64,000 nt of DNA from the NCBI GenBank assembly GCA_002269645.1, contig NIVC01000168.1, forward strand, positions 723,297 to 787,296, in the 5' to 3' direction. Below are positions 17,471-63,552 of the stretch, one piece after another. Below the pieces are notes generated by a model. It saw only the letters and a list, made by a program, of their open reading frames with translations. It searched no databases and was not told where the DNA came from. Each line of letters starts with the position of its first letter. Positions within the stretch are counted from its first letter, which is position 1. A program made the translations under genes and the position numbers. Source of the stretch: Macrostomum lignano. Taxonomy: Eukaryota.

Positions 17471-18164
17471 ATTGGACTGCATTTCATCTCCAATTCAATT
17501 CATATTCCATATTGCATAGCCTTAAAACCAGCTGGAAATCAAACTCGCTGGGCACGAGAACTCACCAGACTCTTCAGCTCCGTCATCATCGACCCCAGCC
17601 TCCATGATGCTCAGGACGCAGAGCCTCAAAGGAACTGCGAGAAAAGATGGATATTTATGAATTTAAACATTTCCCGATTGGCTTCAGTGAGCATAAATCA
17701 TTGGATTAACAAACCTTTCCTTTCTTGAAAGTTTCCTGGAAAATCTTGAAATCAATGCTTTTAGAGACTGGTTTTTCTAGCCAGAAATTCTTTTTGCCAG
17801 GAAAATAAATGGTACCTTGTAGTCATTAATGACTGCAGTAATGCTTCTATGCATATACACGTACAAGCGTTTCCCCAAACTAGGTACTAACATTCCAGCG
17901 TACCCCTCTGTACGTTCATTGAATTAATGCACATTATGAATTCAGTGTACATTGCAGTTTGTTATTTTGCAGTCTGAAACTAAGTGAAAATGGTTAGAAA
18001 AAGCCTATTTATGTACATGTATGTCATGCATAGGATTAACGAAGCAAGGCAGTATTTTGATTCACAAAAGTTAAAGAGCAGGTGGACTCTATATGAGTAC
18101 CTGTACTCAAAGTATGTCAGGTCTGCACTATTTAGTGTGTCAGTTCTGTACTGTTTCGTGTGTC

Positions 18165-22443: not shown

Positions 22444-25400
22444 ATGGTGCAGCCATTGTGCACCTTCGCTGGCCCCATTTGCTGGCTTCTGTCGGCATTC
22501 TTGGCTCTGTGCGTCAGCGCCCAGAATATTGGTATGCCTGTGATTGCATTTTATCTCTAAAAAATAACTGCTAAAAATGAAAGACCTACGGTGTCAATGG
22601 GATCCTTGAGATCAAACTTAGTGTCAGATTTATCCATATAAACTGACAACTAATCGTATCCTTCCCTATCTCTTCAATCATTCTATGTAACTTTTTGCGT
22701 GTGGTGGCCCCCAATTGGGCCGTTTTATTTTGTTCTAGTGTGTGCACAATCTATTTAGAGCGGTTCGTATATTAGTTGCACGATCGATATCTCAGGCCTC
22801 TACGAGGGCGAGGCGCACGAAGAGGCCCAGTTCTTTTAATTTCAAATATACGACGAGCTAGCCTGGATCTCGCCTCGGTTTATACTCTCCCTTCCGACTT
22901 TTACGACCGTTTAAGTAATTTGTATTACAGATTTAAACGCAGTTAACAGATAAGACCGTCTGTTGCTAAATTTAGCATTAAGTGTTAGCTCATTCTTAGT
23001 TAATTCTTCCCACTGGCAATTGAACACTTGGTGCTTTTAACTTTCTTCGCTAAATATTCTAAGCCTCTTAACGAAGTAAGAGCGCAATCACATTTGCTTT
23101 TCGCATCTATCCTAATTTTTGTCTGAGGTAGGATTCTTGACTTGTGCCGATCTGACATTTCTGGTACAGCCAAGGGTACATTGAGTGTGTAGCACTATGT
23201 TGTTATTAAAACTGCATGAAATGACGAAAGATGCTTAGCGGTAGTATTTAATAGATAAAGAATCCTTCAATCTTTGTTCAATCTCAGGGTGCAAAATTGT
23301 GTTAATGAAGGCAATCTCAAGAAGTCACGACCTCGTTGATTCTTTAGGTCCGGCTCAGCTCGACAAACTCAGCCAGTCGCCAGCCGGTCTCGGCCGCTAC
23401 ATGCCGGCAGCCTGGGCCATCCCCAAGTCCACAGTAGCGAACCAGGGCCAGAACTCCCTGATGCTGACTGCCACAGCCTCTGGGCCCTTCATCCAGGGTG
23501 CTTACCTGACAGAGATGCCCGTGTGGATCTACTTTCCATTCGACTTCAACGTCACCGGCTTTCTGGTCTATGGCAACATGTCTCGTTCGACTAGTCCGGC
23601 AGGACGGGTGACCAGCTTCAAGGCGGGCTACTCAACCACGAAGTCCTACCTGACCTCAGGCTCCACCGTGTACATCATGGGAGGATCCGGCTCGCCTGTG
23701 AGTAACATTTTCTAGTCGGTCGCTCGCGTCCGGCCCCGGGTCGACGGGCGCCACCATGATCGACGCCGTCTGGGGCAGCCTCGCCGACCTCGCGGCCCGG
23801 GGAACCTCGGTCCACCTGCAGTGGGTGCCTGGCCACGCGGGAATCCCAGGCAACGAGGCCGTGGACGAGATCGCCAAGCAAGGCACCACGCTGGCGCAAG
23901 GCACCGCGCCCGTACCGCTAGCTGCCGCGCAGGCTGCCGTCCGCCGCTACTGCCTCGCCCGCTGGCACCAGATCTACAACGCGGCGGCCACCGAGGCGGC
24001 GAGCACGAGCTCGCTTGCCTGGCACCTTGCCTGCACGGCGGGCCGCCTGCCGCCTCAGCCGACAAGCGACCTCACGCGGCGGCAGGAGCGGCTGATCTGC
24101 CAGCTGCGCGCCGACCGCTGCCCGGCCCTGCGGGGCTTCCAGGCCGCCATCGGCGTTGACGTGGCCCCCACCTGCCGCCTCTGTGGCGATGGAGAGGAGA
24201 CGGCGGCCCATCTGCTGATCTCCTGCCCCGCCCTGACATCACACCGCTGCCGCCTCTGGGGGCCAAGCCCGGAGCCCGCGGCAGTTTTCGAGAACTGCGT
24301 CGCGGTGTTGAACTTCCTCGGGAAGGCGGGCGCCATCTGACGCCCGGTGCCATGGGCCCTGGCCCGAGCACGCCCGAAGAAGAAGAAGAAGAAGCTAGGA
24401 ACTTACTTATGATTTATAATTTCTAACCCTCAGCCTTCCACTAATCATCACCTTCCTAAGACAAACATATTAGTGATTAGATTTTGAATAAATGAGTGAC
24501 ACATGTAGCTCTGTATAAATATATTCAGTAGTCGCAAGCAAGATTGAATAATAGATGATAAATCATCGCATTTTAATAACCCCCCCCACGCAACCCCTTC
24601 AAAATGTCCAAATCAACGGATTATGCGCCGTTCCCAGACTCGCAATTCTCGCCGATTCCCCGATTCTGGCCGATGAACCCCCGCATAACATAAGAGATAT
24701 ACAAAACGCTTTAAAGAGGAAGCAGACATTTCGAGTGGCCTGCCCTCACCATTTACAATGCCGTCATCAAGCACTTGTGGCTTTTTGTTTTGTAAGAGTA
24801 GTACAGTTGTCCAAAACTGCTACACACTGAACTTTTGAGAGGATCGATGAGAGGATCGACTGTAGGGGCGGAGCAGCTCCACGATCCCTGGTTGGGTTCC
24901 GTTCGCAGCTACAATAATTTAATTGGGGCTTGTGCACGAAAATTAGCCGGGGGTCGTCGTGCGATGCAAAACTATGAGAGCCGACCCCCAAGGCACAGAG
25001 TCGACATGCCAGATATACTAGACATACTAGACATACTAGACATACTAGACATACTAGACATACTAGACATACTAGACATACTAGACATACTAGACATACT
25101 AGACATACTAGACATACTAGGTAGCAGACACCATGTGCTAACATAAGCTAGCAAATATAGCTAAGCCAGTTGGCATATAATAGAGAACATCACTTGAGAA
25201 GTTTTTCTGCCATTTCAAGTCAGTTATTATGCTACAAAGGTTTTACATTTGCATGCTTTCTTTCAGAAAACCTTTTCTGTCTTCTACGCCGATGCCAGCA
25301 CTCCAAGTTTTGTGCCCTTGGAAGTGTCCATGGTAACCCAGCTGGCGCTCTTCGAAGTTGCGACATGCCAGACGGCCTGCGTCCTGCAGCTGGATTTGGT

Positions 25401-28400
25401 CGGGTATCCGAGTACTACAGGTAATGCTTTTGCTACCGGAAAGTTTGCTACAGCTTTTCAGAACAAAACTTAATGACTGCATCTAGAAATAATTTTTTTG
25501 TGATAAATCACTCACAGCCTGCCCCGGCATCCCGACTGCTGAGTACACTTCGTCGATTACCAAGACCGCCCAGGAGACGCTGGTGATGCTGAACTTCACA
25601 CGAATTTACTACCTGACCAGCTTCGTACTGCGAGGTCTTTCGGCTGAGCCAAACTTCTGGCTATCCTATCAGAAAGTGCTCGGAGAGCCAGCCGAGAACC
25701 TGACTCACGCTTGGAACTCCAGCCTCTATCTGGTATGTTTCTGCTGCATTTTCCTAAAGATTGGGGCTTCGAAAGATTTGATGGTGGGGTTGAATAAGCG
25801 CGCATCACATTAGCACGCATGTGTCTCTTTTTGCTAGTCGGTACAGAAGCGCGCACTGGCATAAGCGCGCAGGCAATTTTACGGGTGAAACAGAAGCGCA
25901 TGATGTACCGATAAACGCGGGACAGTGCAGGTCTGCGCTGCTCCCGACAGGCCGACCGGCACTGACCCCAGAACCTCGACAGCACTGGCGATCTCAACCT
26001 CAGGCAACAAAGGTGGGGCCAGAAACTTCAGCAGCCACTGTGTTACTCTCTGGTCCAAAGCACTGCGGCTGATGAACGGCTGAAGACCACTGCATGTCAG
26101 ACCACTGCATGTCAGACCACTGCTGACGACAGCCTGGCAGAAGTAAAACCAGCAGCCTCGGGCTTCGGCATAACCCTGCCAGCCAAAAAGTGGCAAACTC
26201 GACGCACTCTATTGTTAGAAGTCCCCAACCACCCAGCGCTAACTGCACTGACTTGATGGGAGAGCTGAAAAAAGCGGTTGCTTCTTATTCTAACTTTAAG
26301 CTGCAGTATTCAGATACGCGCTTGTGTCACTGACAGCTGTTTATAAATGCGCGCTTGTGTCACTGACAGCTGTTTATGAATGCGCGCTTGTGTCACTGAC
26401 AGCTGTTTATAAATGTGCGCTTGTGTCACTGACAGCTGTTTATGAATGCGCGCTTGTGTCACTGACAGCTGTTTATGAATGCGCGCTTGTGTCACTGACA
26501 GCTGTTTATAAATACGCGCTTGTGTCACTGACAGCTGTTTATAAATGCGAGCTTGTGTCACTGACAGCTGTTTATGAATGCGCGCTTGTGTCACTGACAG
26601 CTGTTTATAAATGTGCGCTTGTGTCACTGACAGCTGTTTATGAATGCGCGCTTGTGTCACTGACAGCTGTTTATGAATGCGCGCTTGTGTCACTGACAGC
26701 TGTTTATAAATGCGCGCTTGTGTCACTGACAGCTGTTTATAAATGCGAGCTTGTGTCACTGACAGCTGTTTATAAATGCGCGCTTGTGTCACTGACAGCT
26801 GTTTATGAATGCGCGCTTGTGTCACTGACAGCTGTTTATGAATGTGCGCTTGTGTCACTGACAGCTGTTTATAAATGCACGATTGTGTCACTGACAGCTG
26901 TTTATAAATGTGCGCTTGTGTCACTGACAGCTGTTCATAAATGCACGCTTGTGTCACTGACAGCTGTTTATGAATGCGCGCTTGTGTCACTGACAGCTGT
27001 TCATAAATGCACGCTTGTGTCACTGACAGCTGTTCATAAATGCGCGCCTATGTCAGGCGCTTAATAATGCGTCCCGGATTAGGTACATGTACCAATATAC
27101 ACAACTTCCCCTAAGAAATGCACTTCAGTTCAATGTTTCACATTGCAAATACGCACTTTGTTCCAGTTCCCCGTCACTTACGCGGACGAACGCTTTGTCG
27201 TGCCGTTTATTCTAACACCCGTGCAGCTACAGATCCACCTGTCTCCGACATCGGCCGTGACTGGAATTGACAGTCTGACTGGCTGCGCCATAGAGAGTAA
27301 GTTCAGAATTGACATGCCCTTTTTGCTGGGAGAGTACTGTTGAGCTTGCATCAATTATCTTTGCCTTCACGTTGCTAGTGAAACAATTTAACCCATGTAG
27401 CGTAATTAATCCGGTAGAATCCTCATCTCTAAACTATTCGTTGGAATTTTAGCCGGAAGCTGATGTCGGATAGGCTGATTGGTGGTGATTCCTGGGCCGG
27501 GGTCTTGCAGCCTAGTTGATGCTGCAAGCACTCACTCAAATCATGCATTGGCGCAGCTATGCAGCAGCAAGTGCTCTGCCAGCCGTCTATGGCACTGACT
27601 GGGGTCAGACCAGTTGCAGAGGTACTTAATTGCAAACGTATGAGTTGAGCCAAAGGTTCAAATTAAACCAGGGAAGATTCAGTCGCACGATTCATGCTGG
27701 CCTCACGCAGAATGGGACAGAAGGTTTAAAAAAGACGCAGTATATTTATTAAATGCGTAATCGCAGGATTAACAGTAGAACTACCAAAGGAAGGGGGAAT
27801 CCCCCCCTGCACCGGAACGGAACAACGCCGGCGCATGAAACTCCGGAACACAGGCTAACTTTTTGTACCGCACCTTCTCAAACAAGAATAAAGTCGCCAG
27901 CTTCCGGACCGTCGAGATATTCAACGATTTTGCCAGAAGGTCGGATTTTTCCCATTAGCGCTAACGTATTCATTACACCCAAACGCCCCAGTGCAGCCTT
28001 GCAAAGCATTCAAATTTCATCAGCACGTTGACCACATGTGTCTGCATCAGCTCTGACTTCGTTGTTCACTGGCCTTCACCCAGGCGGAGCATATGGACAT
28101 TCAACAGGTGGCACCAGGTTACTATGGACAACCCTGATGCGAATTTCTTAGTTTCACTGATCAAGCCTCGACAGTGGAAGACCTCAACTGCTGGACATAC
28201 TCAGCTAGTCTCTCAAGCATTCCCGTTATCACTCCGACGCCGTCGGAATCGTCAGAACCCCCCCCCCTCGGTAGTTCTACGGGCGGAAAAATGGCCTTGT
28301 ATTCCTTCCTATGGTCTGTGCCATAAGCGGCTGGCAGAGCACCTGCTGCTGCAGATCTGCACCAATGCATGATTAACCTCTACCCTCGCCTCCCTCTACC

Positions 28401-55400: not shown

Positions 55401-58400
55401 GCCCTGATGTCCCTGCAGTCGAGTCCAAGCAGGGCCCTGCGGAGGGTGGGGTTTCCATCTGCTTTAATACAGCTGTTTTCACCAAACCTCGTACAAATGC
55501 TTTCAACAGACTGTCCAGTGAACTTCTATTATCATGAGGGCGCCTGCCGGCACCACCTTGTCGATGGCATCGGCGGCATCCCTCGCTCTGTTGCTGAGGC
55601 CTACTGCAAGAGCGTTCACTGGCTGAAGTCAGGAGGCCTGTTCCAGCCAACCAGCTACTATGACTATGCAGCTTTGCGACTGGCCTATGTTGACTTGTCA
55701 CTGTGAGTAAAATAGCTCTTTTTGTCTCTAGCTGGCTGGTGTAAAGCACTCTCTACTACGCCTTCCTCAAATCATCTGTCAAATTGCGCCTTAGTGTTTC
55801 TGAAAGCGCTAACTAAAAATTCCTCCCGACAGGAACGTCTGTTACGAAAATTGTTTTATTTGACGCTCCAAATCCTATTTTAAATAGTCAGTTGGCTTGC
55901 TTCGACATTTAAAGCAAAGAACTAAAGATGTGTTGTTTAAGAACCCCAAATTGGTCCTTCCAATGTTAAAAGTAGCGCCAACGTGTGATGTAAAGACTAC
56001 AGCAGCAGAATTACCTCTTTTCACAAATTTCTGCAGAAAATTCAATCAAAGCCAGCAGCCACTGCGCCGCGACGCCAGCTTTCACATGGACGCCAGACAG
56101 CGCCCATCCGACGGTCAGTGGGTCACGAGTTCGAACTCCAGCCTGGCTTGGAGCCACTGGGCGCCCAGCCAGCCAGCGGTCGGGTCCTGCGCCACCTCGC
56201 GTCTCACTGAAGAGGCCTGGACTTCTGTTGATTGCGACTCCAGCCGAGCCCACGTCATCTGCCAGATCGAGGCTGGTCAGTTTTTTTTGCTGCGGCTTCA
56301 ATTGTTGCTCGATCTTGGATCGAAGCAGTGTTTTTCCGGAGCCCGCAAAACATAAATTTAGGGCACGAATCTTAATCGCTTTGTTGTGGGAAGACCATAC
56401 ATAGGAAGCATCGAGTCCTTACTTCAACTCGGGGGTTGGAGAGGGAAGAGAGGGGAGAGAGTAGAAGGGAGGGAGGAAAGGGAGAGGTAAGAGAAAGGAG
56501 AGAGTAGAGAGGAGAGAGGAGAGAGGAGAGAGAGATGAGAAAAGAGCGAAGAAGGGGGAGGGAAGAGAAGAGAAAAGAGGAGGGAGATGGAAGAGAGAGA
56601 AGGGAGAGAAGAGAGGAGAGGGAAGCGATAAAGGGGCGAGAGAAATGAGAAAAAAGAGGAGAGGGGGAGAGAGAGAGGAGAGAGGAGAGAGGAGAGAGGA
56701 GAGAGGGAGAGAGAAGAGAGAGAAGAGGGGAGAGGGAAGAGAGAAAAAGAGGAGAGAGGGGGAGAGGGGAGAGGGAAAAGAGAAGAGAGGAGAGATGGGG
56801 AGAGGGGGAGAGGGAAGAGAAAAAGAGGAGAGAGGGGGAGAGAGAAGAGAGGAAAGAGGGGAGAGGAGACAGAGAGAGGAGAGAAGAAAGCTGAGAAGAG
56901 ATGAGAAGAGACACCAACCTCGAGCGGGCTGGATTGCTATTGAGAAGTTTCAAAGGCCCCGCGGGCGGGAGTTCTCTGACCCTACTCTAACTAGTCCATT
57001 CTCATTTGTAAAGAATGCCTTCCAATCTGAGTTGGCTTTGCTTGTGTTTTTTCAGTCTACACCAGCGGGGTAGGGTTCTTTGATTATTAAACGCCACTAA
57101 CAATTTTTTTCAAGAATTTTTTGTGATTATTAACTTGCTGATGTTTCAGTGACAGCTTGAAAAAAGTCTTTATTTTTTCTTCTAGACGAGAATCAGCATC
57201 TGGACTGCAGCAGGCCGTTCTACAATGTGATTTTCAACTACTCGGGAAATGCAGAGGGCAAGCGGGCACTTTACTATGGCAGCATTCAGTCTGCACTCGT
57301 TAAGTGCCAGGCCGGCGCCTGCAACACACACATGTCCTGAAGCCTTCTCAAGGTGAAAATAAAGTCAGCCTCAAATGACAGTGATTTATGCATTCACCTG
57401 AACCTTAGCAAGGTATACGTGCAATTTTAAAAAAATCTACCAAGCTATCTCCATTCTACAAGTACTTCATTCCATAGCTTGTGATAATGTATAATTTGCA
57501 TTGATTGTACATATGGGTAGAACCGTAGATCAAGGTACATGTAAGTTAAACCAGTGATAGCCGATTTCAATTATAGTAAACCAACTTAGGTGATGCAACA
57601 AATATAAAGTTTCATGTAACTCAGCGGGGGTTTGGGTTGTGTGGCTTTGCCAATGTACTCAAATTTGGTCCCTCTGGCCCATGAGCTTGAGTATGCTCTG
57701 TCCAGTGTACTTGACTCTAGACTGTTATAGGCATGTTGGTTGTATGCTTCCTACTTGTATAATAAAATCAATTGATGATAAATTCTGCAAGGCACGATTT
57801 CTTTTCACAAACCAAGCTCGACCTGTATTTGTTAGTGACTTGACTTGCAGTCCATAGTGAGCTTCAAGCCTACTTTCAATATTTCTACTCACCTTGCCAT
57901 ACATGTATAAAGAAATGAGCCATGCAACGCATGCACTATCACACGAAGAAAATCGCCTCAAGATCTGCTTGTTGTGCTACAAAAAGGGCTCATCAATGCA
58001 ACGAATAGGTAATGCCTCGCTGAAACGCATTCAGGCACACTTTTTGCCCAACTACAATGCGAATGATGAGCAGCTACCTGCAGCACTCTGTGCCCGATGC
58101 AACAAGCTTCTGGCTGACGTCGACAAGGGCATAAAAGCGCCGAATGTTTTGCCGAACTCCTCTGAGGTCGTAAAGGTGAGCCCAACAAAGATTACGCGAC
58201 AGTCCAGCAGTTGTGCTTGCAAAATATGTGAGACTGCCCGGTTCAACCCGATTGGGAAAGGACTGGGAAAATGGAAACCAGAGCCACATTCGCTTGGACG
58301 ACCCGCGTGTTCGGATCCAGATCATGGTCTGCCACCGGCACAACCTGTTGTCATCTGCCAGCGCTGCCACTCAATGGTTGGCAGAGGTTTGCCTCACTAC

Positions 58401-61400
58401 TGCACGCAAACACAGCGACGAGAAATTCTATTCAGTAAGTTGTCGCTAGACCGTCGAGGTGCCGAAATCCACGCAAGTGACGTGATCAAAGCTAAGGCTG
58501 CTTCCACCGGCTCAAACTCTAGATTTCAATTGGCAACTAGAGGTCGTGATCTTACAGTGTGTGTTGGGCAACGGGCTGGTAGTTCTACATCAATGAGAGG
58601 TGGCTGCGCCGTACCAGCAGAGGAATTCAGCCGATTCCAGCAGACGCTGTGTTTGAGCAGTCGGCAAACTAAGTTGGCCGCCCAATTTTTTCGAGCATGG
58701 AAAGGACGCAAGAGCATTGAGCCAAATTTGCGCAGCAAACTGAGCGCCATCGACTCTGCTCTAGATGATTTGTTTGAGTTGACTAACCTAGAGATGGACT
58801 GTGCCAAAGGAAAAAGGGAAATGCGCAGCATTGTATTCTGCACTGATCCTCTGGCTCTGATTGACAGAGTGATGGCACGTCGTCAGGTCAGTGCAGATGA
58901 CGGCGCATTGATTAAAGTTGGCATCGACAGCGGAGGTGGCTTCTTGAAATTTTGTGTTAGCATTGTGTCTGCTCAAGGTTTAAAAGATCAACCTACCGGA
59001 AGTCGCAGCACGTACGCAGAAGGCGCATGCCGTTTCCATTTTGAGGATGGAGGAGTCCGTAAACTGCTCCTGCTTGCCATTGCCGAATCTGTTTCCGAGT
59101 CCTACGATAATCTGCAGCAGATCCTGAATCTTCTTAATTTGCAAGGATTTTCATTCTGTGCAGCAGTTGATATGAAAATTTCGAATGCGATCCTGGGACT
59201 TCAGTGCTGCAGCAGCACCCATCCCTGCCCTTGGTGTAAGACTGCCAGGATCGATTTTTCTAATCCAGACCGCACGAACGTGTTGAGATCGATCGGCGGT
59301 ATTCGGCTACAGGCATTTGAGTACCAGCGCACTGTAGAAGAAAAAGCGCCGCGCAACGTGTCTGCTGCTGCTTTCAAAAACTGTGTGCGTTCTCCTCTGC
59401 TCGAAGTTCCAGACAGCACAATGGTGCTCCAGGCCATTCCACCAATGGGGCTGCATCTCTTGCTTGGCGTGACCAATCGACTATTCGAAGAACTGGAAAC
59501 TCAACTGCGAGGACTCGAAGACTGTCAGATAAGCACCGATGACTGGCTACAGCAGCTTGGCCTTCGACGACCATTGCAGAACGGTGGGAACTTTGCCGGA
59601 AACGCCTGCGAGTGTCTTCTAAATGGCGTCGACATTTTGATTGCAATGCTGGCTCAGCACAATGTGTTTTCGGCAATGCCTGTAGCTCATGCCCTACGCT
59701 GCTTCCGCGATGTGAAGGCTTCGTGCTTTGGTATGAGTGTGTGTGGAGACTTTGAGAATCGAGTCCGGGCATTCGAACAAGCCTATATCGATCTTGGAAT
59801 CCGCGTCACCCCGAAAGTCCACGCTGTTATTGACCACGTTGTCCAGTTTTTGAACATGTCCAATATAGCTGGAGAACCCAAGAAGGGACTTGGCTTCTGG
59901 TCTGAGCAGGTGGTTGAGACTGCACACCACGATTTCAGCAGCATGTGGCAAGACTTTCGGATCGATTTTCATCATCCATCGTATCCAGATCGACTGCGCA
60001 AGTGTGTTGTTGCATACTGCTCTCGTCATGCCTAAACAAAATGTGAACTAGCTAAATCAATCAAGACTGCGAATTAGGATTATACATTTCTCTTTATTGG
60101 GATGAACAAATAGTTCTTAGTCAGACCCTGTAGACTGGAAAGCGAAATTAAACAGAACATAAACAGGAAGTAAATAATTGGAATCTTTCAAAAAGCGTGT
60201 TATCTTACCCATTCAACCCACCGAAATACAATGTCCGCATTTCAAAATTCCATTCTAGCTTTGCAATGCATGCATAGAGATAGTTAGTTGACTAGAAAAT
60301 GAAATCTAAAAGAGACTAGAGGATCGCTAGCTATTCTCTTATCCCGATAGGACCCTAAAGTTATTTTTTCTTTTATTTATTATTGAATTAATGATAGGAA
60401 TACATTAGGTAGCTGGTGGAAACCTTAATTTAATTCTTTCTATGGTAAACTTATATTGCAGAAGTCCTTGTTCTTACCTATCATCATGGAAAGGGAATAG
60501 CTTCCTTTGAAAACTCAGCAGTATTTAATAGAAGGATATGCCTATGGTTCCAAGGGCCAAAATGGCATGAATACGAGAGCTGTGCAGCAAATTTACAGGC
60601 TCACAGCCAATGAGATGGTAGCTACGTATGAGGAGGGAATAATAGCTACAACTCAAAAGCAAGCGATAGAAAAATATCTGGGATAATATTCTCTCCATGC
60701 CTTGCATCACTCACGCACAATTTTGCGCAATGCTTCTTTGTCCACTTTTATGTAGCATTCTCTGTACTGTACGAGTGTTTATGCTGTTTTTTGTTACATT
60801 TAGTCACAATTATTCATTGATGTTTCAATTTATACTTTATACTTTGGACTTTGTAAGGTGATGGCATACCTATGAATTATAATGAAAAGTTTCTGACTTG
60901 TTTTAGGATCATTTTTTCAAATTTCACAAACTCTTGTAGACACTCATTTTTTGCATCACGCATATTGAAAACCAATAGTAATTAGGTCATATGGTAATAA
61001 AGTGCTGTAAATCAGAGATAGCTCGGGAGATTTTTTTGAAATTGCACATATGTTGTGCTAAGGTCCAGATGAGTGTGTAAATTATTGTCATTTCAGGCTG
61101 ACTTTATTTTCACCTTTAAAGGGCTTCAAGACATGTGTGCAACAGTCTTCAAGCCGGTGTTGGAGAGCCAGCCATCTACAGCTCAACCGTGCACTCGCGT
61201 TCCATTGGCTTTCAGCCCAGCTGGCTGCAGAATCAGTTCTTCATCGAACAAATCTGCCGAAGTAAGCGCGAACGGCTCTGATAAATTAAGTTTCGGTCTT
61301 CAGATTAAATAATTTTTCTGTGCTCCTACGACCTTTTTTTACTCAATATATTATATAGTATTTAATATTGCATTGCACCTGCCCCAATTGGGCCAGATGT

Positions 61401-63552
61401 GCAACCGACAGCTCAGTTGCAGCTATTGCGCGGCGCATCTGAAGGCTGTTCTGGGAAGGACTGGGGGTCACCACACACACCCTCAATTCCCCCAGCTGAT
61501 GCTTTCACCCATTTTGCAGCTGCATGGGTGAACTGAAGCAATGCAGAGTGTCTTGCTCATGAACGCAAATTGTTTCAGTGGGATCGGGAATCGAACCCCC
61601 GACCTTCAGGTTTTAAGTCCGACGCTCTAACCACTAGGCTACAATCCCCCTCTAAGCTACAACCCCTCTAAGCTACAACCCTAATATACAACCCCCTAAG
61701 CTACAACCCATCTAAGCTACAACCCCTCTGAGCTACAACCTCTTCTAAGCTAAAACCCCTCTTAAGCTACAACCCCTCTAAGCTACAACCCCTCTAAGCT
61801 ACAACCCCTCTAAGCTAAAACCCCTCTTAAGCTACAACCCCTCTAAGCTACAACCCCTTCTAAGCTACAACCCCTCTAAGCTACAACCCCTCTAAGCTAC
61901 AACCCCTTCTAAGCTAAAACCCCTCTAAGCTACAACCCCTCTAAGCTAAAACCCCTCTTAAGCTACAACCCCTCTAAGCTACAACCCCTCTAAGCTACAA
62001 CCCCTCTAAGCTAAAACCCCTCTAAGCTACAACCCCTCTAAGCTACAACCCCTTCTAAGCTAAAACCCCTCTAAGCTACAGCCCCTCTAAGCTAAAACCC
62101 CTCTAAGCTACAACCCCTCTAAGCTACAACCCCTCTATGCTACAACCCCTCTAAGCTACAACCCCTCTAAGCTACAACCCCTTCTAAGCTAAAACCCCTC
62201 TAAGCTACAACCCCTCTAAGCTAAAACCCCTCTTAAGCTACAACTCCTCTAAGCTACAACCCCTCTAAGCTACAACCCCTCTAAGCTACAACCCCTCTAA
62301 GCTACAACCCCTCTAAGCTACAACCCCTCTAAGCTACAACCCCTCTAAGCTACAACCCCTCTAAGCTACAACCCCTCTAAGCTAAAACCCCTCTAAGCTA
62401 CAACCCCTCTAAGCTACAACCCCTCTAAGCTACAACCCCTCTAAGCTACAACCCCTCTAAGCTAAAACCCCTCTAAGCTACAACCCCTCTAAGCTAAAAC
62501 CCCTCTTAAGCTACAACCCCTCTAAGCTACAACCCCTCTAAGCTACAACCCCTCTAAGCTACAACCCCTTCTAAGCTAAAACCCCTCTAAGCTACAACCC
62601 CTCTAAGCTAAAACCCCTCTTAAGCTACAACCCCTCTAAGCTACAACCCCTCTAAGCTAAAACCCCTCTAAGCTACAACCCCTCTAAGCTACAACCCCTC
62701 TAAGCTACAACCCCTCTAAGCTACAACCCCTCTAAGCTAAAACCCCTCTAAGCTACAACCCCTCTAAGCTACAACCCCTCTAAGCTAAAACCCCTCTAAG
62801 CTACAACCCCTCTAAGCTACAACCCCTCTAAGCTAAAACCCCTCTTAAGCTACAACCCCTCTAAGCTTCAACCCCTCTAAGCTAAAACCCCTCTAAGCTA
62901 CAACCCCTCTTAAGCTACAACCCCTCTAAGCTACAACCCTTCTAAGCTACATCCCCCTAAGCTACAGCCGCGATTATACTCAAATCAATCGGTAAAATTC
63001 TATTGACACCCATCATTTTGGTATCGGTAACAAAGTATTTTTAAAAGTAAAACGGGAAAAGTAGCTTTTCAGAGAAGTAACAATTGTTAAATTATAGTAA
63101 ATAGTAACGAGTGACTTACTGAACACTACCAATCTACCACTAGCAGAAGACTGCTGGCACAGCCTGACTTCTGCCATGTCCAACGTAAGCGCAACGCTGT
63201 TTACAAACGCCACGAATGGCAGCGATTCGCATTCGTTGATATCGTACACGACTCTGAGTAGCTCGAACGGAGTTTTCAACGGATACTTCTTGACGGTGCG
63301 CATCCGGTCAATTCAATTTCAAGGCTTCTCTGAAATTGGAGCATTAGTAAATTTATTGGCATAACCAATATTCGAAACCCGCAGATCACATTTAATAAGC
63401 AAGTTCGAGTGACCGGTTTCGGCTTCATGGGTGCGGGCAACAATTTAAGGATTGGAGACAAACCGGTTGCCTACGCAGCCGTGAAGCTGCTGTTCTTTGA
63501 AGCGGAAGCGGCTGCGTGGGTCAGTGCAGCAACGGCGCTAAGTCTGAACAAG
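22444..63552 (+). CDS. Giant multi-exon secreted/extracellular mosaic protein (F5/8C, CTLD, F-type lectin-like, kringle-like, FAMeT-like, PAN-like); continues beyond the window; interrupted by a transposon at 57327-61139
   Basis: Exon 1 (22444-22531) encodes the signal peptide MVQPLCTFAGPICWLLSAFLALCVSAQNI. More than 40 further candidate exons have canonical splice sites, and most checked junctions are phase-compatible (e.g. 23348-23697, 25267-25420, 25518-25732, 27167-27296, 28726-28900). A few junctions near 29510-30600, 31930-32010 and 33180 are unresolved. Confidence 0.85.
23348..25420 (+). CDS. F5/8 type C (discoidin)-like domain 1 (two exons)
   Basis: VWIYFPFDFNVTGFLVYG...RVTSFKAGYS...CVLQLDLVGYP. 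Confidence 0.7.
23716..24394 (+). mobile_element. 5'-truncated non-LTR retrotransposon (RNase H plus CCHC zinc knuckle, I/Ingi-like group) with (GAA)n tail
   Basis: VHLQWVPGHAGIPGNEAVDEIAKQG, then CRLCGDGEETAAHLLISCP. The segment is very GC-rich, ends in a (gaa)6 tail and is flanked by a possible 4-bp TSD CTAG (23712-23715 and 24395-24398). Confidence 0.9.
25010..25120. repeat. 9-bp tandem repeat (gacatacta), about 12 copies
   Basis: Direct tandem repeats. Confidence 0.95.
26310..27050. repeat. 33-bp palindrome-rich minisatellite (gtgtcactgacagctgtttataaatgcgcgctt), about 22 copies
   Basis: Tandem units; translation period of 11 aa. Confidence 0.97.
27773..28282. mobile_element. Possible non-autonomous DNA element with short TIRs
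   Basis: gtagaactacc..aagggg at the left is inverted relative to ccccccctcggtagttctac at the right. Confidence 0.4.
28726..29514 (+). CDS. C-type lectin domain 1 (two exons)
   Basis: CPPGWMRGLTGFCW...WSEADQFC...GRL; YHVGLRR...WLWSDGT...DCAAL...VPCTSKLHFICQ. Confidence 0.85.
29640..30432. repeat. 16-bp minisatellite (ctccgacacttcatat) with variant units, about 50 copies
   Basis: Direct tandem repeats. Confidence 0.97.
31801..32110 (+). CDS. Kringle-like domain 1
   Basis: CTVTGDDYEFYDYGVTMTQSGRACQAW...CYF...EYC. Confidence 0.55.
32191..33753 (+). CDS. F-type lectin (FTP)-like / galactose-binding-fold domain 1
   Basis: ATMDGND...; LNNFTVKV...C...FWCERPIAGRYV. Confidence 0.55.
32477..32765 (+). 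mobile_element. tRNA-derived SINE, copy 1
   Basis: A box tagcctagtgg, degenerate B box, and central ccttgatcaagacacttaactct...ctgtaaaatggg. Homologous to the copies at 36335 and 61385. Confidence 0.85.
33854..35327 (+). CDS. FAMeT (Methyltransf_FA)-like domain 1
   Basis: RWEISIGGNGTAAFL...DDYQSLQLVWTQLGVDVSIGG resembles YEIVIGGWGN...EFRxFWIxWxxGxIxVG. Confidence 0.5.
34074..34679. mobile_element. MITE with about 85-bp TIRs containing a nested second MITE (34173-34364)
   Basis: Outer acaacttaatc...ggacggtaaactcgaaaatcatggcgaaaaaaaattagaggctcgttt...gttctatggc is mirrored at 34595-34679. Inner termini are ggccggatgcagaaagct and agctttctgcatacggcc. Confidence 0.8.
35405..36009 (+). CDS. F5/8 type C domain (three exons; first intron GC-AG)
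   Basis: YIQVSFLKSVTAFVLATQ...HSTDGESF...ESRWMLYGC. Confidence 0.7.
36092..38941 (+). CDS. F-type lectin-like domain 2
   Basis: ITDAS...GPWIAVDFVSLRYIEFALVFG...TLKITELEIYGNP. Confidence 0.55.
36335..36605 (+). mobile_element. tRNA-derived SINE, copy 2
   Basis: A box tagcccagtgg, B box ggttcgattccc, same body as copy 1. Confidence 0.9.
36969..37241. mobile_element. MITE-like element; its terminus is shared with the sequence at about 15225-15240
   Basis: ggagcgtcgcca and tggcgacgcccc form inverted termini; gcgtcgccaccggga matches the reverse complement of 15225-15240. Confidence 0.55.
37400..38680 (+). mobile_element. Degraded non-LTR retrotransposon 3' end (CR1/L2-group-like), apparently interrupted by a 35-bp array
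   Basis: NKTCPKCHMGIESEVHFLFKC at about 38448-38510, followed by FKNLTAEEKVFYLMN in another frame. The left flank assignment is weaker. Confidence 0.55.
37685..38415. repeat. 35-bp minisatellite (gtgaaactgtcaacattgacgagtagcgaaatcat), about 21 copies
   Basis: Head-to-tail units with no spacers; internal GTCAA-ca-TTGAC hairpin. Confidence 0.97.
39317..40930 (+). CDS. F5/8 type C domain (start of the second cassette)
   Basis: DWLSLYLPYTYALTGLLIRGG...VTSFQVFYS...RQLKIDLVGYP. Confidence 0.75.
40036..40300 (+). mobile_element. Second tRNA-headed SINE-like element
   Basis: Acceptor-like stem GTGGCTG/CGGTCAC, A box tggcagagtg and B box ggctcgattcc, followed by a structured body. Confidence 0.55.
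41160..42260 (+). CDS. Linker module plus C-type lectin domain 2
   Basis: CPPGFVPMGDTCL...ARRVC...GDL; IHVGIVRSGSVWQWLDGT...WKLGQP...FACQ. Confidence 0.85.
43011..43325 (+). CDS. Kringle-like domain 2
   Basis: NCLIAQGDKENYVYPVNVTAYGRVC...NYC...PFCYV...QSCILHNC. Confidence 0.55.
43450..44244 (+). CDS. F-type lectin-like domain 3
   Basis: SLVVDFKSLHFINGVDL; LRLYVGNS...C...IAC...RFLAL...LNITALMVYG. Confidence 0.55.
46448..47158 (+). CDS. FAMeT-like domain 2
   Basis: FNARLRQQTLKVWLTN is paralogous to MFARLRNSGLKLWLTN at about 33950; RYIVHLSGNG...DEFANLRVTW. Confidence 0.5.
47290..50195 (+). CDS. F5/8C, F-type lectin-like, F5/8C and linker domains
   Basis: VRLYPRKWQNGLELRWQLYGC; LAVDGN...LC...W...SFCEFEIYGYP; AIGLEDGRV...RAKVVRLLP...LRFELLGYP. 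Confidence 0.75.
48765..49135. repeat. 25-bp minisatellite (gggatgcctgggatttctatagctt), about 15 copies
   Basis: Direct tandem repeats. Confidence 0.95.
50475..51345. repeat. 32-bp palindrome-rich minisatellite (gcagatcagctagctatacatgcatgtctcat) with 21-bp deletion variants
   Basis: Tandem units containing AGCTAGCT and ACATGCATGT. Confidence 0.95.
51512..52369 (+). CDS. C-type lectin domain 3
   Basis: CPTNSLRHGRFCY...AQSIC...GQLA; NWAS...GDCLV...QWRTVACD...PFLCE. Confidence 0.85.
52530..54730 (+). CDS. PAN-like module, two F5/8C domains and a linker (includes a GC-AG intron at 52953)
   Basis: EEWLQVDFLHKVTVQSVAMSG...VTSYIILYS...GRSFRLYP...KLELFGC; RVFSVITAG...ISSYDLRYG...RLQFGVLAFP. Confidence 0.75.
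54935..55330 (-). mobile_element. Non-LTR retrotransposon 3' fragment with short-repeat tail, carrying an inserted copy of host exon sequence
   Basis: CRECGHFICECPVFTQDRLTYLG...PRIF and FHQLVRYLRATGRA; tail aagtcaagtaagtcaag. Confidence 0.65.
55510..56275 (+). CDS. C-type lectin domain 4
   Basis: CPVNFYYHEGAC...AEAYC; WSHWAPSQP..GSCA...WTSVDC...HVICQ. Confidence 0.85.
56428..56915. repeat. Polypurine (GA/GGA) low-complexity tract
   Basis: Almost exclusively A and G on the + strand for about 490 nt. Confidence 0.95.
57327..61139 (+). mobile_element. Transib/RAG1-like (Chapaev-related) DNA transposon, 3,813 bp, apparently intact
   Basis: Termini CACACATG...CATGTGTG; imperfect TIRs of about 112 bp (57327-57438, 61028-61139); perfect 5-bp TSD CAACA at 57322-57326 and 61140-61144. 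Confidence 0.9.
57894..60035 (+). CDS. RAG1/Transib/Chapaev-type DDE transposase, 713 aa
   Basis: N-terminal H-x7-C-x2-C...P-x3-C-x2-C motif. Catalytic D (GIDSGG), D (AVDMK) and E (SEQVVETAH). Zinc ligands PCPWC and PKVHAVIDH. LHLLLG and FAGN motifs correspond to RAG1 LHCDIG and GN. The ORF is uninterrupted. Confidence 0.9.
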   Translation: MPYMYKEMSHATHALSHEENRLKICLLCYKKGSSMQRIGNASLKRIQAHFLPNYNANDEQLPAALCARCNKLLADVDKGIKAPNVLPNSSEVVKVSPTKITRQSSSCACKICETARFNPIGKGLGKWKPEPHSLGRPACSDPDHGLPPAQPVVICQRCHSMVGRGLPHYCTQTQRREILFSKLSLDRRGAEIHASDVIKAKAASTGSNSRFQLATRGRDLTVCVGQRAGSSTSMRGGCAVPAEEFSRFQQTLCLSSRQTKLAAQFFRAWKGRKSIEPNLRSKLSAIDSALDDLFELTNLEMDCAKGKREMRSIVFCTDPLALIDRVMARRQVSADDGALIKVGIDSGGGFLKFCVSIVSAQGLKDQPTGSRSTYAEGACRFHFEDGGVRKLLLLAIAESVSESYDNLQQILNLLNLQGFSFCAAVDMKISNAILGLQCCSSTHPCPWCKTARIDFSNPDRTNVLRSIGGIRLQAFEYQRTVEEKAPRNVSAAAFKNCVRSPLLEVPDSTMVLQAIPPMGLHLLLGVTNRLFEELETQLRGLEDCQISTDDWLQQLGLRRPLQNGGNFAGNACECLLNGVDILIAMLAQHNVFSAMPVAHALRCFRDVKASCFGMSVCGDFENRVRAFEQAYIDLGIRVTPKVHAVIDHVVQFLNMSNIAGEPKKGLGFWSEQVVETAHHDFSSMWQDFRIDFHHPSYPDRLRKCVVAYCSRHA
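61385..61650 (-). mobile_element. tRNA-derived SINE, copy 3
   Basis: Minus strand ggggattgtagcctagtggttagagcg...ggttcgattccc followed by the same body as copies 1 and 2. Confidence 0.9.
61651..62966. repeat. 16-17-bp satellite (cccctctaagctacaa), about 80 copies, contiguous with the SINE 5' end
   Basis: The minus-strand unit GGGGTTGTAGCTTAGA matches the SINE head GGGGATTGTAGCCTAG. Confidence 0.97.

What the first reader, a model, noticed from the sequence alone, without database searches (positions are those of the whole stretch)
22444..63552. Giant secreted multi-lectin mosaic protein spanning more than 41 kb
A signal peptide is followed by four CTLDs, about seven or eight F5/8C-like domains, about four F-type-lectin-like domains, two kringle-like, two FAMeT-like and two PAN-like modules, and the gene is still open at the window end. 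I do not recognise this combination. Three classes of carbohydrate-binding fold in one chain suggest a pattern-recognition, mucus/adhesive or receptor ectodomain role (inference). No transmembrane segment is seen so far.
Basis: partly seen in the sequence, partly recalled or inferred. Interest (0 to 1): 0.75.

Follow-up and report, generated by a model that had tools for sequence, protein, structure and literature searches.

The report
Giant flatworm discoidin/C-type-lectin mosaic gene
The window holds a real, very large multi-exon gene of the flatworm Macrostomum lignano that encodes a secreted protein of at least 3,447 residues built from repeated discoidin, C-type-lectin-like and other modules; only a fragment of it is in public protein databases, and its function is unknown.

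Summary
The observation largely holds. From the ATG at 22444 I could chain 52 exons, all with GT-AG introns. They give one uninterrupted 3,447-codon reading frame up to 56275. The frame starts with a signal-peptide-like segment and has no other transmembrane-like stretch.

The window is Macrostomum lignano. UniProt fragment A0A1I8G7X9 is about 100% identical to exons 39.3-44.25 kb and reproduces my independently derived splice junctions.

Domain support:
- **C-type lectin-like domains:** four. Two pass Pfam's threshold; the other two are supported by PDB or profile matches.
- **F5/8C discoidin domains:** six solid (profile against PDB, E about 1e-28), plus two doubtful.
- **Kringle-like modules:** two, moderately supported; one is only a half domain.
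- **FAMeT-like modules:** two, weakly supported.
- **"F-type-lectin-like" and "PAN-like" modules:** real repeated modules, but no Pfam or PDB support for those names.

The protein is a duplicated super-module of about 1,150 residues followed by a partial third round. Outside M. lignano, only the C-type-lectin part finds relatives among 1.84 billion proteins.

Continuation from 56.3 to 63.5 kb is unproven. The canonical sugar-binding motifs are absent from the lectin-like domains, so "multi-lectin" describes folds, not shown activity. I rate it a lineage-specific variant of the known invertebrate mosaic adhesion/recognition proteins, of moderate interest.

The parts
22444..22531 (+). Exon 1: start codon plus signal-peptide-like segment; ends in intron phase 1
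   Evidence: Sequence read. It is the only strongly hydrophobic 19-residue window apart from one CTLD core strand. It is the only plausible Met plus hydrophobic start in the locus.
23288..25420 (+). D1, discoidin (F5/8C) domain. Exons 23288-23697 and 25267-25420; an alternative acceptor lies at 23348.
   Evidence: It is a member of the D-class profile, which hits PDB discoidin domains at E 1e-28. No Pfam hit on its own. A retroelement fragment (RNase_H + zf-RVT, 23702-24337) sits in its intron.
25518..27296 (+). X1, about 110-residue beta-sandwich module with a Cys at each end. Exons 25518-25732 and 27167-27296.
   Evidence: Paralogous to X2-X4. No Pfam or PDB sequence hit. The fold is inferred from the X2 model.
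28726..29514 (+). CTLD1. Exons 28726-28900 and 29291-29514.
   Evidence: Pfam Lectin_C 34.7 bits, above the 22.6 cut-off. PDB ovocleidin-17 E 1.5e-6.
30573..30987 (+). Y-I, Ser/Thr-rich Cys-containing linker module. Exons about 30573-30764 and 30865-30987; the 5' border is uncertain.
   Evidence: Supported by paralog models P0011 and P0015. No Pfam or PDB hit.
31801..31932 (+). Kr-I, kringle-like half module (44 residues, 3 Cys)
   Evidence: The Kr profile hits only kringle proteins in PDB, E 1e-6. Paralog models splice it directly to the next module, with no second kringle exon. The candidate second exon at 32005 is out of phase.
32191..33753 (+). Exons 32191-32424 and 33526-33753.
   Evidence: Exons supported by P0011 and P0015. 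Four paralogous copies exist. No Pfam or PDB support for the F-lectin name.
33905..35327 (+). FAM-I, FAMeT (Methyltransf_FA)-like module. Exons 33905-34029 and 34997-35327.
   Evidence: 27% identical to FAM-II. Smith-Waterman z 3.5 against a true Methyltransf_FA domain. hhalign P 0.0027. No Pfam hit.
35613..36009 (+). Dfam-I, discoidin domain. It begins in the 3' end of the previous exon; further exons 35613-35728 and 35859-36009.
   Evidence: D-class profile member.
36092..38942 (+). S-I', second-type 'F-lectin-like' module ending ...CTLKITELEIYGNP. Exons 36092-36310, 36712-36836 and 38843-38942.
   Evidence: The exon junction NVGM|VARMLG matches paralog model P0005. No PDB hit. SINE-like and minisatellite insertions lie in its introns.
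39343..40930 (+). D2, discoidin domain. Exons 39343-39680 and 40781-40930.
   Evidence: Identical to UniProt model P0002. Pfam F5_F8_type_C E 0.0017. D-profile member.
40998..41437 (+). X2. Exon 40998 (or 41025)-41216 and the first part of exon 41306-41604.
   Evidence: P0001/P0002. It is the only region of the AlphaFold model with pLDDT above 70. Foldseek top hits are galactose-binding-domain-like folds at weak E 5e-3, and the tool does not report which query region aligned.
41438..42260 (+). CTLD2. Rest of exon 41306-41604 plus exon 42049-42260.
   Evidence: PDB CTLD E 6e-4. It is the part of P0001 that matches CTLDs of other animals, E down to 1.6e-17. No Pfam hit.
42409..42884 (+). Y-II. 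Exons 42409-42699 and 42768-42884.
   Evidence: P0001/P0002/P0003. No Pfam or PDB hit.
43016..43323 (+). Kr-II, kringle-like module with six Cys. Exons 43016-43147 and 43249-43323.
   Evidence: Pfam Kringle E 0.019, below the cut-off. Kr profile against PDB. Junction as in P0001.
43450..44242 (+). S-II. Exons 43450-43677 and 44009-44242.
   Evidence: P0001/P0002. The public model reads through the 44242 donor to a stop at 44248.
46448..47020 (+). FAM-II, FAMeT-like module. Exon 46448-46614 and the first two thirds of exon 46706-47158.
   Evidence: Smith-Waterman z 4.4 against a true Methyltransf_FA domain. hhalign P 0.0027. The AlphaFold model is unusable, pLDDT 36.
47021..47705 (+). Dfam-II, discoidin domain. 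End of exon 46706-47158 plus exons 47245-47391 and 47555-47705.
   Evidence: Pfam F5_F8_type_C E 8.4e-5. D-profile member.
47838..48484 (+). S-II', ending ...FSFCEFEIYGYP. Exons 47838-48068, 48173-48315 and 48397-48484.
   Evidence: Paralogy with S-I'. No PDB hit.
48562..49664 (+). D3, discoidin domain. Exons 48562-48747, 49187-49398 and 49520-49664.
   Evidence: Pfam E 0.035. D-profile member.
49812..50196 (+). X3. Exons 49812-49960 and 50067-50196.
   Evidence: Paralogy.
51544..52362 (+). CTLD3. Exons 51544-51751 and 52052 (or 52127)-52362; the acceptor is uncertain.
   Evidence: 31.8 bits against a profile built from CTLD1, 2 and 4. No Pfam hit.
52555..52743 (+).
   Evidence: No Pfam hit, no PDB hit, and no similarity to a true PAN domain, z -1.1.
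52818..53759 (+). D4, best-preserved discoidin domain, with both terminal Cys. Exons 52818-52956 and 53324-53498 plus the start of exon 53604-54228.
   Evidence: Pfam F5_F8_type_C 32.7 bits, above the 28.2 cut-off, E 9e-8.
53760..54228 (+). D5, divergent discoidin-like module within one exon
   Evidence: Only weak similarity to the D profile, E 0.008 among 27 units. No Pfam hit.
54305..54730 (+). X4. Exons 54305-54489 and 54595-54730.
   Evidence: Paralogy.
55510..56275 (+). CTLD4. Exons 55510-55702 and 56037-56275. It ends at a phase-1 GT donor; read-through would stop at 56353.
   Evidence: Pfam Lectin_C 24.8 bits, above the 22.6 cut-off. Sequence read.
56276..63552 (+). Unverified continuation. 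Predicted weak exons 57186-57303, 61122-61261, 63147-63295 and 63385-63552 are interrupted by a 713-residue ORF (57894-60032) and by minisatellites.
   Evidence: These are exon-chaining predictions only. No similarity to the gene or its paralogs. The 63.1-63.5 kb pair is only faintly discoidin-like, E 0.003 in a 27-unit set.

Best explanation
Positions 22444-56275 (at least) are one protein-coding gene of the free-living flatworm Macrostomum lignano. It encodes a secreted, non-membrane-anchored (as far as seen) modular glycoprotein of at least 3,447 residues.

The gene arose by tandem duplication of a super-module of about 1,150 residues: discoidin, X beta-sandwich, CTLD, Ser/Thr-rich Y linker, kringle-like, S module, FAMeT-like, discoidin, S' module. 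This unit is present twice. It is followed by a partial third round: discoidin, X, CTLD, P, discoidin, discoidin-like, X, CTLD. Most domain borders fall on phase-1 introns, which is the exon-shuffling pattern.

Shown: the gene structure, the signal-peptide-like start, the CTLD and discoidin identities, the internal duplication, and the restriction of the family to M. lignano paralogs.

Inferred: the protein acts outside the cell as a multivalent binding scaffold in matrix, mucus or adhesive material, or in recognition of foreign surfaces. Many weak binding modules on one chain would give avidity. Because the CTLDs lack the canonical calcium/sugar ligands, the binding may be to proteins, lipids or non-canonical glycans rather than classical lectin binding.
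For: - 52 exons with GT-AG borders give one open frame of 10,342 nt without a stop.
- Intron phases are 30 in phase 1, 16 in phase 0 and 5 in phase 2.
- The splice junctions I derived independently match UniProt models A0A1I8GUP4 and A0A1I8G7X9 (97% and about 100% identity).
- Paralog model P0005 runs across the S'-to-discoidin-to-X junction. P0011 and P0015 run across Y, Kr and S. This supports continuity across module borders.
- Gaps between modules are of intron size, for example 78 nt at 48484/48562 and 400 nt at 38942/39343.
- Only one Met plus hydrophobic start is plausible, and there is no later transmembrane-like window.
- Domain identities: Lectin_C above threshold twice; F5_F8_type_C above threshold for D4; D profile against PDB discoidins E 1e-28; Kr profile hits kringle proteins only.
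- Paralogous exons at about 27-34% identity keep open frames and key residues.
- All family-profile hits in the whole window lie on the plus strand within the chain.
Against: - No transcript evidence was available.
- Public databases hold only a 766-residue fragment of this locus. A search with modules I and III found nothing.
- Many domains are so divergent that Pfam misses them. Several discoidin copies have lost the terminal cysteines.
- Kr-I is a half domain whose candidate second exon is out of phase.
- AlphaFold models are mostly of low confidence.
- The 3' end is not defined. Read-through at 56275 would end the protein at 56353. Nothing convincing follows for 7 kb.
- The function is entirely inferred from domain types.
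Confidence: 0.6

Rival explanations
1. The locus is a tandem array of two to four separate paralogous genes, roughly one per super-module, and not one giant gene.
For: The super-module is tandemly duplicated. The only public model covers a single sub-region, 39.3-44.25 kb, and ends at a stop reached by reading through the 44242 donor. Modules I and III have no public model.
Against: The public models lack a start Met and begin in intron sequence, so they are fragments. No internal signal-peptide exon was found. Junctions between super-modules are short, phase-compatible GT-AG introns. A paralog model spans the equivalent junction (P0005).
Confidence: 0.17
2. The region is a decaying or unexpressed relic of a mosaic gene (a pseudogene), and its domain-like exons are no longer functional.
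For: Most modules are extremely divergent from family consensus. Cysteines have been lost. Kr-I is a half kringle. The introns are full of minisatellites and transposon fragments. There is no public model for two thirds of the locus.
Against: 10.3 kb of coding sequence in 52 exons has no stop or frameshift and keeps intact GT-AG sites. Old internal duplicates at about 30% identity still keep open frames and core residues. A 97%-identical second copy is annotated. The same half-kringle arrangement is kept in two paralogs, so it is a feature of the family and not recent damage.
Confidence: 0.08
3. The 3,447 residues are the ectodomain of a membrane receptor. Its transmembrane and cytoplasmic parts would lie beyond 56.3 kb or outside the window.
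For: The frame is open at a conserved phase-1 donor at 56275. Distant CTLD relatives include membrane proteins such as mannose-receptor-like proteins and a CTLD-Sushi receptor kinase.
Against: No transmembrane-like segment or homologous exon was found in 56.3-64 kb. The gap holds a transposon-like ORF and repeats.
Confidence: 0.15

Closest known systems
UniProt A0A1I8G7X9 / A0A1I8GUP4 (Macrostomum lignano, 'C-type lectin domain-containing protein' / 'F5/8 type C domain-containing protein') and paralog fragments A0A1I8GE34, A0A1I8HGR7, A0A1I8J0E9, A0A1I8GDF2, A0A1I8GZE6
   Same: A0A1I8G7X9 is about 100% identical to window exons 39336-44247. A0A1I8GUP4 is 97% identical. The others are 28-74% identical paralogs with the same module order.
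   Different: All are uncharacterised fragments of 215-766 residues, without start codons or with read-through ends. None shows the full architecture of at least 3,447 residues. Their automatic names are erratic.
Invertebrate 'macrophage mannose receptor 1-like' multi-CTLD mosaics, e.g. Anneissia japonica XP_033107417 (12 Lectin_C + Methyltransf_FA + PAN_1)
   Same: Large extracellular chains that mix many CTLDs with a FAMeT-type domain and other adhesive modules. Its CTLDs are the detectable relatives of CTLD2.
   Different: Similarity is limited to one CTLD (residues about 250-350 of P0001). That protein has no discoidin, X, S or kringle-like modules. The flatworm protein has only 4 CTLDs and is dominated by discoidin-type modules.
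Discoidin- and lectin-rich marine adhesion proteins (sea-urchin nectin with six discoidin domains; sea-star Sfp1; flatworm Mlig-ap1/Mlig-ap2)
   Same: Giant secreted proteins of marine invertebrates built from repeated discoidin, C-type-lectin or galactose-binding modules. M. lignano itself uses such proteins for temporary adhesion (PMC6410801; the comparison with nectin and Sfp1 is discussed there and in PMC10057474).
   Different: Mlig-ap1 and Mlig-ap2 have Lys/Arg-rich repeats, vWD, C8, TIL, EGF, LDL-receptor and TSP-1 domains (PMC6410801). None of these was found here. No sequence similarity was tested or found. Expression in adhesive glands is unknown.
Vertebrate discoidin-domain proteins (coagulation factors V/VIII C domains, neuropilin b1/b2, lactadherin)
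   Same: The D-class profile aligns over the whole discoidin domain with E 1e-16 to 1e-28.
   Different: Those proteins have one or two discoidin domains in quite different contexts. Several flatworm copies lack the N- to C-terminal disulfide.

Membership tests
C-type lectin-like domain (Pfam PF00059) | Profile match above the curated threshold | tested here: met
   CTLD1 scores 34.7 bits and CTLD4 24.8 bits, against a 22.6 cut-off. CTLD2 and CTLD3 fail Pfam. CTLD2 matches PDB CTLDs (E 6e-4) and foreign CTLDs (E 1.6e-17). CTLD3 scores 31.8 bits against the profile of the other three.
C-type lectin (functional, calcium-dependent sugar binding) | EPN or QPD tripeptide plus WND motif that ligate calcium and sugar | tested here: not met
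   Read from the sequences and the alignment. CTLD2 has QPG where EPN sits. CTLD1 has RPPPD, CTLD3 ANESGD and CTLD4 SQPAVG. None has WND. Motif knowledge is from the CTLD literature, not from a tool.
F5/8 type C (discoidin) domain (PF00754) | Profile match over the whole domain | tested here: met
   D4 scores 32.7 bits, above the 28.2 cut-off. The profile of seven D copies hits FVIII, FV, neuropilin and lactadherin discoidin domains at E 1e-16 to 3e-28. D5 and the 63-kb pair are only weak.
F5/8 type C (discoidin) domain | Disulfide between Cys at the domain start and end | tested here: inconclusive
   D4 has both Cys. Dfam-I and Dfam-II have the C-terminal ...YGC. D1-D3 end in ...VGYP or ...LGYP without a Cys.
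Kringle (PF00051) | Profile match above threshold and six-Cys triple-loop pattern | tested here: inconclusive
   Pfam E 0.019, 15.7 bits against a 34.3 cut-off. The Kr profile hits only kringle proteins in PDB, best E 1e-6. Kr-II has six Cys in 69 residues. Kr-I and its paralogs have only the first half with 3 Cys.
F-type lectin (fucolectin/FTP) | Profile similarity to F-lectins and the His/Arg/Arg fucose-binding motif | tested here: not met
   No Pfam hit. Two profiles find no F-lectin in PDB. No relation to the D profile by hhalign. Only motif-level resemblance seen by eye (AVDGN......CEFEIYG).
Methyltransf_FA / FAMeT domain (PF12248) | Profile match to PF12248 | tested here: inconclusive
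   No Pfam hit. Smith-Waterman against the bona fide domain of XP_033107417 gives z 4.4 and 3.5, while control units give z of 0.3 or below. hhalign P 0.0027, probability 11%. The motifs FxAR..L.LWLTN and YxVxxxGNG are collinear by eye. The structure model is unusable.
PAN/apple domain (PF00024) | Profile match and Cys pattern | tested here: not met
   No Pfam hit. The Y/P profile has no PDB hit. Smith-Waterman against a true PAN_1 domain gives z -1.1 to 1.7.
Macrophage mannose receptor family | Ricin-type and fibronectin type II domains, 8-10 CTLDs, transmembrane anchor | tested here: not met
   No such Pfam hits. Only four CTLDs. No transmembrane segment in 3,447 residues.
Macrostomum adhesive proteins Mlig-ap1 / Mlig-ap2 | Lys/Arg-rich repeat regions, vWD-C8-TIL, EGF arrays, TSP-1 repeats (PMC6410801) | tested here: not met
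   None of these domains was found by Pfam. Lys is 2.6% and Arg 4.8% of residues.

The most novel reading that the evidence does not exclude
The locus represents a Macrostomum-specific family of giant secreted mosaic proteins. Several of its repeated modules (X, S/S', Y, P) would be new domain families, or extreme derivatives of the galactose-binding-domain-like fold, with no detectable relatives elsewhere. They would be combined with discoidin, CTLD, kringle-half and FAMeT-like modules in an architecture not described in any animal. The family may serve a flatworm-specific extracellular function such as mucus, rhabdite, adhesive or egg-shell material, or surface recognition.
Probability: 0.35. 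Interest if true: 0.5.

Novelty: new variant of a known kind. Interest (0 to 1): 0.36.

Why it matters
If the gene is expressed as one chain, it would be among the largest predicted secreted proteins of a model flatworm. It is also badly under-annotated: public models cover about a fifth of it.

It illustrates how tandem super-module duplication and phase-1 exon shuffling build lineage-specific extracellular giants. It also adds a candidate to the set of discoidin- and lectin-rich proteins that marine invertebrates use for adhesion, mucus or recognition.

The four unassigned module types could define new domain families. None of this overturns current knowledge; the value lies in annotation and comparative study.

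Tried and rejected
- **X-joined ORF query:** a homolog search with 37 raw ORFs joined by 'XX' (3,970 residues) returned nothing. A 100%-identical UniProt fragment exists, so that negative result was a tool or query artefact. It was superseded.
- **Pfam on unspliced ORF concatenations:** found almost nothing. Domains split by introns need splicing first.
- **My own exon-chaining predictor**: gave a useful draft, but it mis-called several exons (the CTLD1 acceptor, X2a, the D4 N-terminal exon, the S-I N-terminal exon). These were corrected by hand with paralogy and paralog protein models.
- **Spliced sequences:** I used P0001 instead.
- **MAFFT alignment of 36 exon fragments to P0001** (A1): nonsense, so discarded.
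- **AlphaFold of P0001 with 7 paralog rows:** mean pLDDT 41.8, with only X2 usable.
- **AlphaFold of the FAM-II exon:** pLDDT 36, unusable.
- **PDB profile searches** for S (A3), S' (A7), Y/P (A9) and X (A10): no meaningful hit.
- **hhalign of the S profile against the D profile:** no relation.
- **The look-up of encoding contigs** for P0001, P0011 and P0005: not on record.
- **Module I + III query:** no hit.
- **Identity with Mlig-ap1/ap2 or the kringle anchor-cell protein Tmed-krg1:** considered and rejected on domain content (PMC6410801, PMC9229212).
- **ORFs in 56.3-64 kb:** no similarity to the gene or its paralogs.
Full report
**What the window is.** The window is eukaryotic: 39-55% G+C, many minisatellites and transposon fragments, and short exons. 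A spliced query from the middle of the finding hit UniRef entry A0A1I8GUP4 of Macrostomum lignano at 97% identity. That entry is 741 residues and named 'F5/8 type C domain-containing protein'. Its cluster-mate A0A1I8G7X9 (766 residues, 'C-type lectin domain-containing protein') is about 100% identical to window exons between 39336 and 44247. The window is therefore from this free-living marine flatworm. About one fifth of the finding is already deposited as uncharacterised fragment models. They have no start Met, begin in intron sequence and end by reading through a splice donor.

**Checking the observation: gene structure.** No eukaryotic gene finder was available. I wrote a small exon-chaining program with a self-trained 3-periodic Markov coding score and generic splice-site weights. 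I then curated its output by hand, using internal paralogy, candidate splice sites and paralog protein models.

The result is a chain of 52 exons from the ATG at 22444 to the donor after 56275. It has these properties:
- 10,342 coding nucleotides, or 3,447 codons, with no stop.
- AG/GT at every intron border. The one exception is the public model's non-canonical 40930|41025 junction, which I replace with the in-frame canonical acceptor at 40998.
- Median intron length 163 nt.
- 30 of 51 introns in phase 1.

Every junction I had derived for 39.4-44.2 kb before finding the UniProt entries is reproduced in them. This is an independent check of the method. Paralog fragments from other M. lignano loci confirm the module I junctions 30764|30865|30987|31801|31932|32191|32424|33526 and 36836|38843.

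Exon 1 encodes MVQPLCTFAGPICWLLSAFLALCVSAQNIG, followed by a GTATGC donor. This is the only strongly hydrophobic segment of the protein apart from a CTLD core strand. It is also the only credible Met plus hydrophobic start in the locus.

**Checking the observation: domains.**

| Module type | Copies | Support |
|---|---|---|
| CTLD | 4 | CTLD1 and CTLD4 pass Pfam's threshold (34.7 and 24.8 bits; cut-off 22.6). CTLD2 matches PDB CTLDs at E 6e-4 and is the part of P0001 that finds relatives in other animals (E to 1.6e-17). CTLD3 scores 31.8 bits against a profile of the other three. |
| Discoidin (F5/8C) | 6 + 2 weak | See below. |
| Kringle-like | 2 | Pfam only E 0.019. A profile of the five available copies hits exclusively kringle proteins in PDB (plasminogen/angiostatin E 1e-6, HGF, ROR1). 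|
| FAMeT-like | 2 | No Pfam hit; weak pairwise and profile support. |
| 'F-type-lectin-like' (S) | 4 | Real four-copy module; the name is unsupported. |
| 'PAN-like' (Y, P) | 2 + 1 | No support from Pfam, PDB profile or comparison with a true PAN domain. |

- **Discoidin.** Once its N-terminal exon (52818-52956) was recognised, D4 passes Pfam (32.7 bits; cut-off 28.2; E 9e-8). Dfam-II gives E 8e-5, D2 E 0.0017 and D3 E 0.035. The alignment holds six window copies plus one paralog copy from P0005. Its profile hits discoidin domains of factor VIII, factor V, neuropilin and lactadherin at E 1e-16 to 3e-28 over the whole domain. D5 and the exon pair at 63.1-63.5 kb are only faintly similar.
- **Kringle-like.** Kr-II has six cysteines in 69 residues. 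Kr-I is only the first half (44 residues, three cysteines). Its candidate second exon at 32005 is out of phase. Two paralogs have the same half-module spliced directly to the next domain. The half domain is therefore a family feature.
- **FAMeT-like.** Both copies align to the same part of a genuine Methyltransf_FA domain, taken from crinoid protein XP_033107417. The shuffle z-scores are 4.4 and 3.5, while five control modules give z of 0.3 or below. hhalign gives P 0.0027 but only 11% probability. A structure model of the FAM-II exon was useless, with pLDDT 36. I regard the label as plausible but unproven.
- **'F-type-lectin-like'.** I call these S-I, S-I', S-II and S-II'. They get no Pfam hit and no PDB hit with two different profiles, and hhalign shows no relation to the discoidin profile. 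The name rests on motif resemblance only.
- **X modules.** There are four copies of about 110 residues, each with a cysteine at either end. X2 is the only part of the AlphaFold model of P0001 with pLDDT above 70. The Foldseek matches of that model are all galactose-binding-domain-like sandwiches (neuropilin b1, APC10, CBM32, factor VIII C). They are weak (E about 5e-3), and the tool does not say which query region aligned.

**Architecture.** Self-comparison shows that exons of 23-36 kb are paralogous, in order, to exons of 39-48 kb at about 27-34% identity. The protein reads as follows:
- SP
- [D, X, CTLD, Y, Kr, S, FAM, D, S'] twice
- [D, X, CTLD, P, D, D-like, X, CTLD]

It has 73 cysteines and 52 N-glycosylation sequons, and Ser plus Thr make up 18% of residues. 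Old duplicates that keep open frames, splice sites and core residues argue for long-term constraint.

**One gene or several?**

For one gene:
- An unbroken phase-compatible chain.
- Intron-sized gaps at super-module borders: 400 nt at 38942/39343 and 78 nt at 48484/48562.
- No internal signal-peptide exon.
- A paralog model (P0005) that crosses the S'-to-D-to-X border.

Against one gene:
- No transcript data.
- The only public model covers 39.3-44.25 kb.
- A search with modules I and III found no deposited protein.

I put about 0.6 on a single gene, 0.17 on several genes and 0.08 on a non-functional relic. A further 0.15 goes to a variant of the single-gene reading in which a membrane anchor lies downstream.

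**The 3' end.** The second exons of CTLD1, 2, 3 and 4 all end a few codons after the last cysteine, at a phase-1 GT. This suggests the donor at 56275 is used. Beyond it, no ORF up to 64000 shows similarity to the gene, to its module profiles or to its paralogs. The interval holds a GA-rich repeat, an intact 713-residue ORF without Pfam hits (57894-60032), and a 1.3-kb 16-mer array. Read-through at 56275 would add 25 residues and stop at 56353. The secure span is 33.8 kb, not 41 kb.

**Relatives and novelty.** A full HMMER scan of 1.84 billion representative proteins with P0001 found only 21 hits at E of 1e-3 or better.
- The close hits are all M. lignano fragments at 28-74% identity. This is a multi-copy, lineage-restricted family.
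- The distant hits align only to CTLD2. Examples are 'macrophage mannose receptor 1-like' proteins of Branchiostoma and of the crinoid Anneissia. The crinoid protein carries 12 Lectin_C, one Methyltransf_FA and one PAN_1 domain.

Mixing CTLDs with FAMeT and PAN modules thus has a precedent. The discoidin, X, S and kringle-half combination has none that these searches could find.

The gene is not Mlig-ap1 or Mlig-ap2, the known M. lignano adhesive proteins. Those have Lys/Arg-rich repeats and vWD, EGF, TIL, LDL-receptor and TSP-1 domains (PMC6410801). It is also not the six-kringle anchor-cell protein type (PMC9229212).

**Likely mode of action (inference).** The protein has a signal peptide, many N-glycosylation sequons, Ser/Thr-rich linkers and about 26 small binding-type modules on one chain. 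These features fit an extracellular multivalent scaffold of matrix, mucus or adhesive material, or a recognition molecule that works by avidity.

None of the four CTLDs has the EPN/QPD and WND motifs needed for classical calcium-dependent sugar binding. CTLD2 has QPG at that position (alignment). Discoidin domains in other proteins bind lipids, collagen, peptides or galactosides (established knowledge of factor V/VIII, DDR, neuropilin and Dictyostelium discoidins). The ligand class is therefore open, and 'multi-lectin' should be read as a statement about folds.

**Verdict.** It is a lineage-specific variant of a known kind of protein and is partly present in databases as fragments. Its function and 3' end are unknown. 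Interest is moderate.

Noticed in passing
window 4047-14274, minus strand: A single uninterrupted 2,728-residue ORF (6091-14274) consists almost entirely of ankyrin repeats; Pfam matches 39-45 repeat stretches. Downstream on the same strand lies an ORF (4047-5546) with a Mab-21 C-terminal (cGAS-like) domain. This may be one ankyrin-Mab21 gene.
   Followed up: no
window 18093-19538, plus strand: A 482-residue Cys-rich repetitive ORF with weak keratin-B2-like hits lies in a block with strong positive GC skew (+0.29). It may be a gene or just a repeat.
   Followed up: no
window 57894-60032, plus strand: An intact 713-residue ORF with Cys-rich N-terminal motifs and no Pfam hit sits in the gap after CTLD4. 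It is probably transposon-derived.
   Followed up: partly
window 23702-24337: A fragment of a non-LTR retrotransposon (end of RNase H plus zf-RVT) lies in the sense orientation inside the intron that splits discoidin domain D1.
   Followed up: partly
window 32478-32768 and 36263-36608: Two copies of a SINE-like element of about 300 bp lie in introns. Their translated pieces are 77-89% identical.
   Followed up: no
window 26317-27055, 29640-30433, 37682-38419, 48764-49140, 50485-51334, 56448-56884, 61634-62966: Large minisatellite arrays fill many introns of the gene. Periods are 33, 16, 35, 25, 32/64, 7 and 16 nt, with up to 83 copies.
   Followed up: partly
window 40930/41025 versus 40998: The public model joins 40930 to 41025, which implies a non-canonical GT..CA (or TG..AG) intron. 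A canonical acceptor at 40998 keeps the frame and gives an X2 N-terminus of the same length as in the paralogs.
   Followed up: partly
proteins P0003-P0005, P0011, P0015, P0023 (M. lignano paralogs): The UniRef names of these near-identical or clearly paralogous fragments are mutually inconsistent: Omp85, TRAPPC9, DDE Tnp4, WIF, CUB, Kringle. Such names should not be used as evidence.
   Followed up: partly
A homolog search with ORFs joined by 'XX' spacers returned no hit, although the query contained long stretches 100% identical to a database protein. The same region without spacers was found at once. Negative results from X-joined queries are unreliable.
   Followed up: partly
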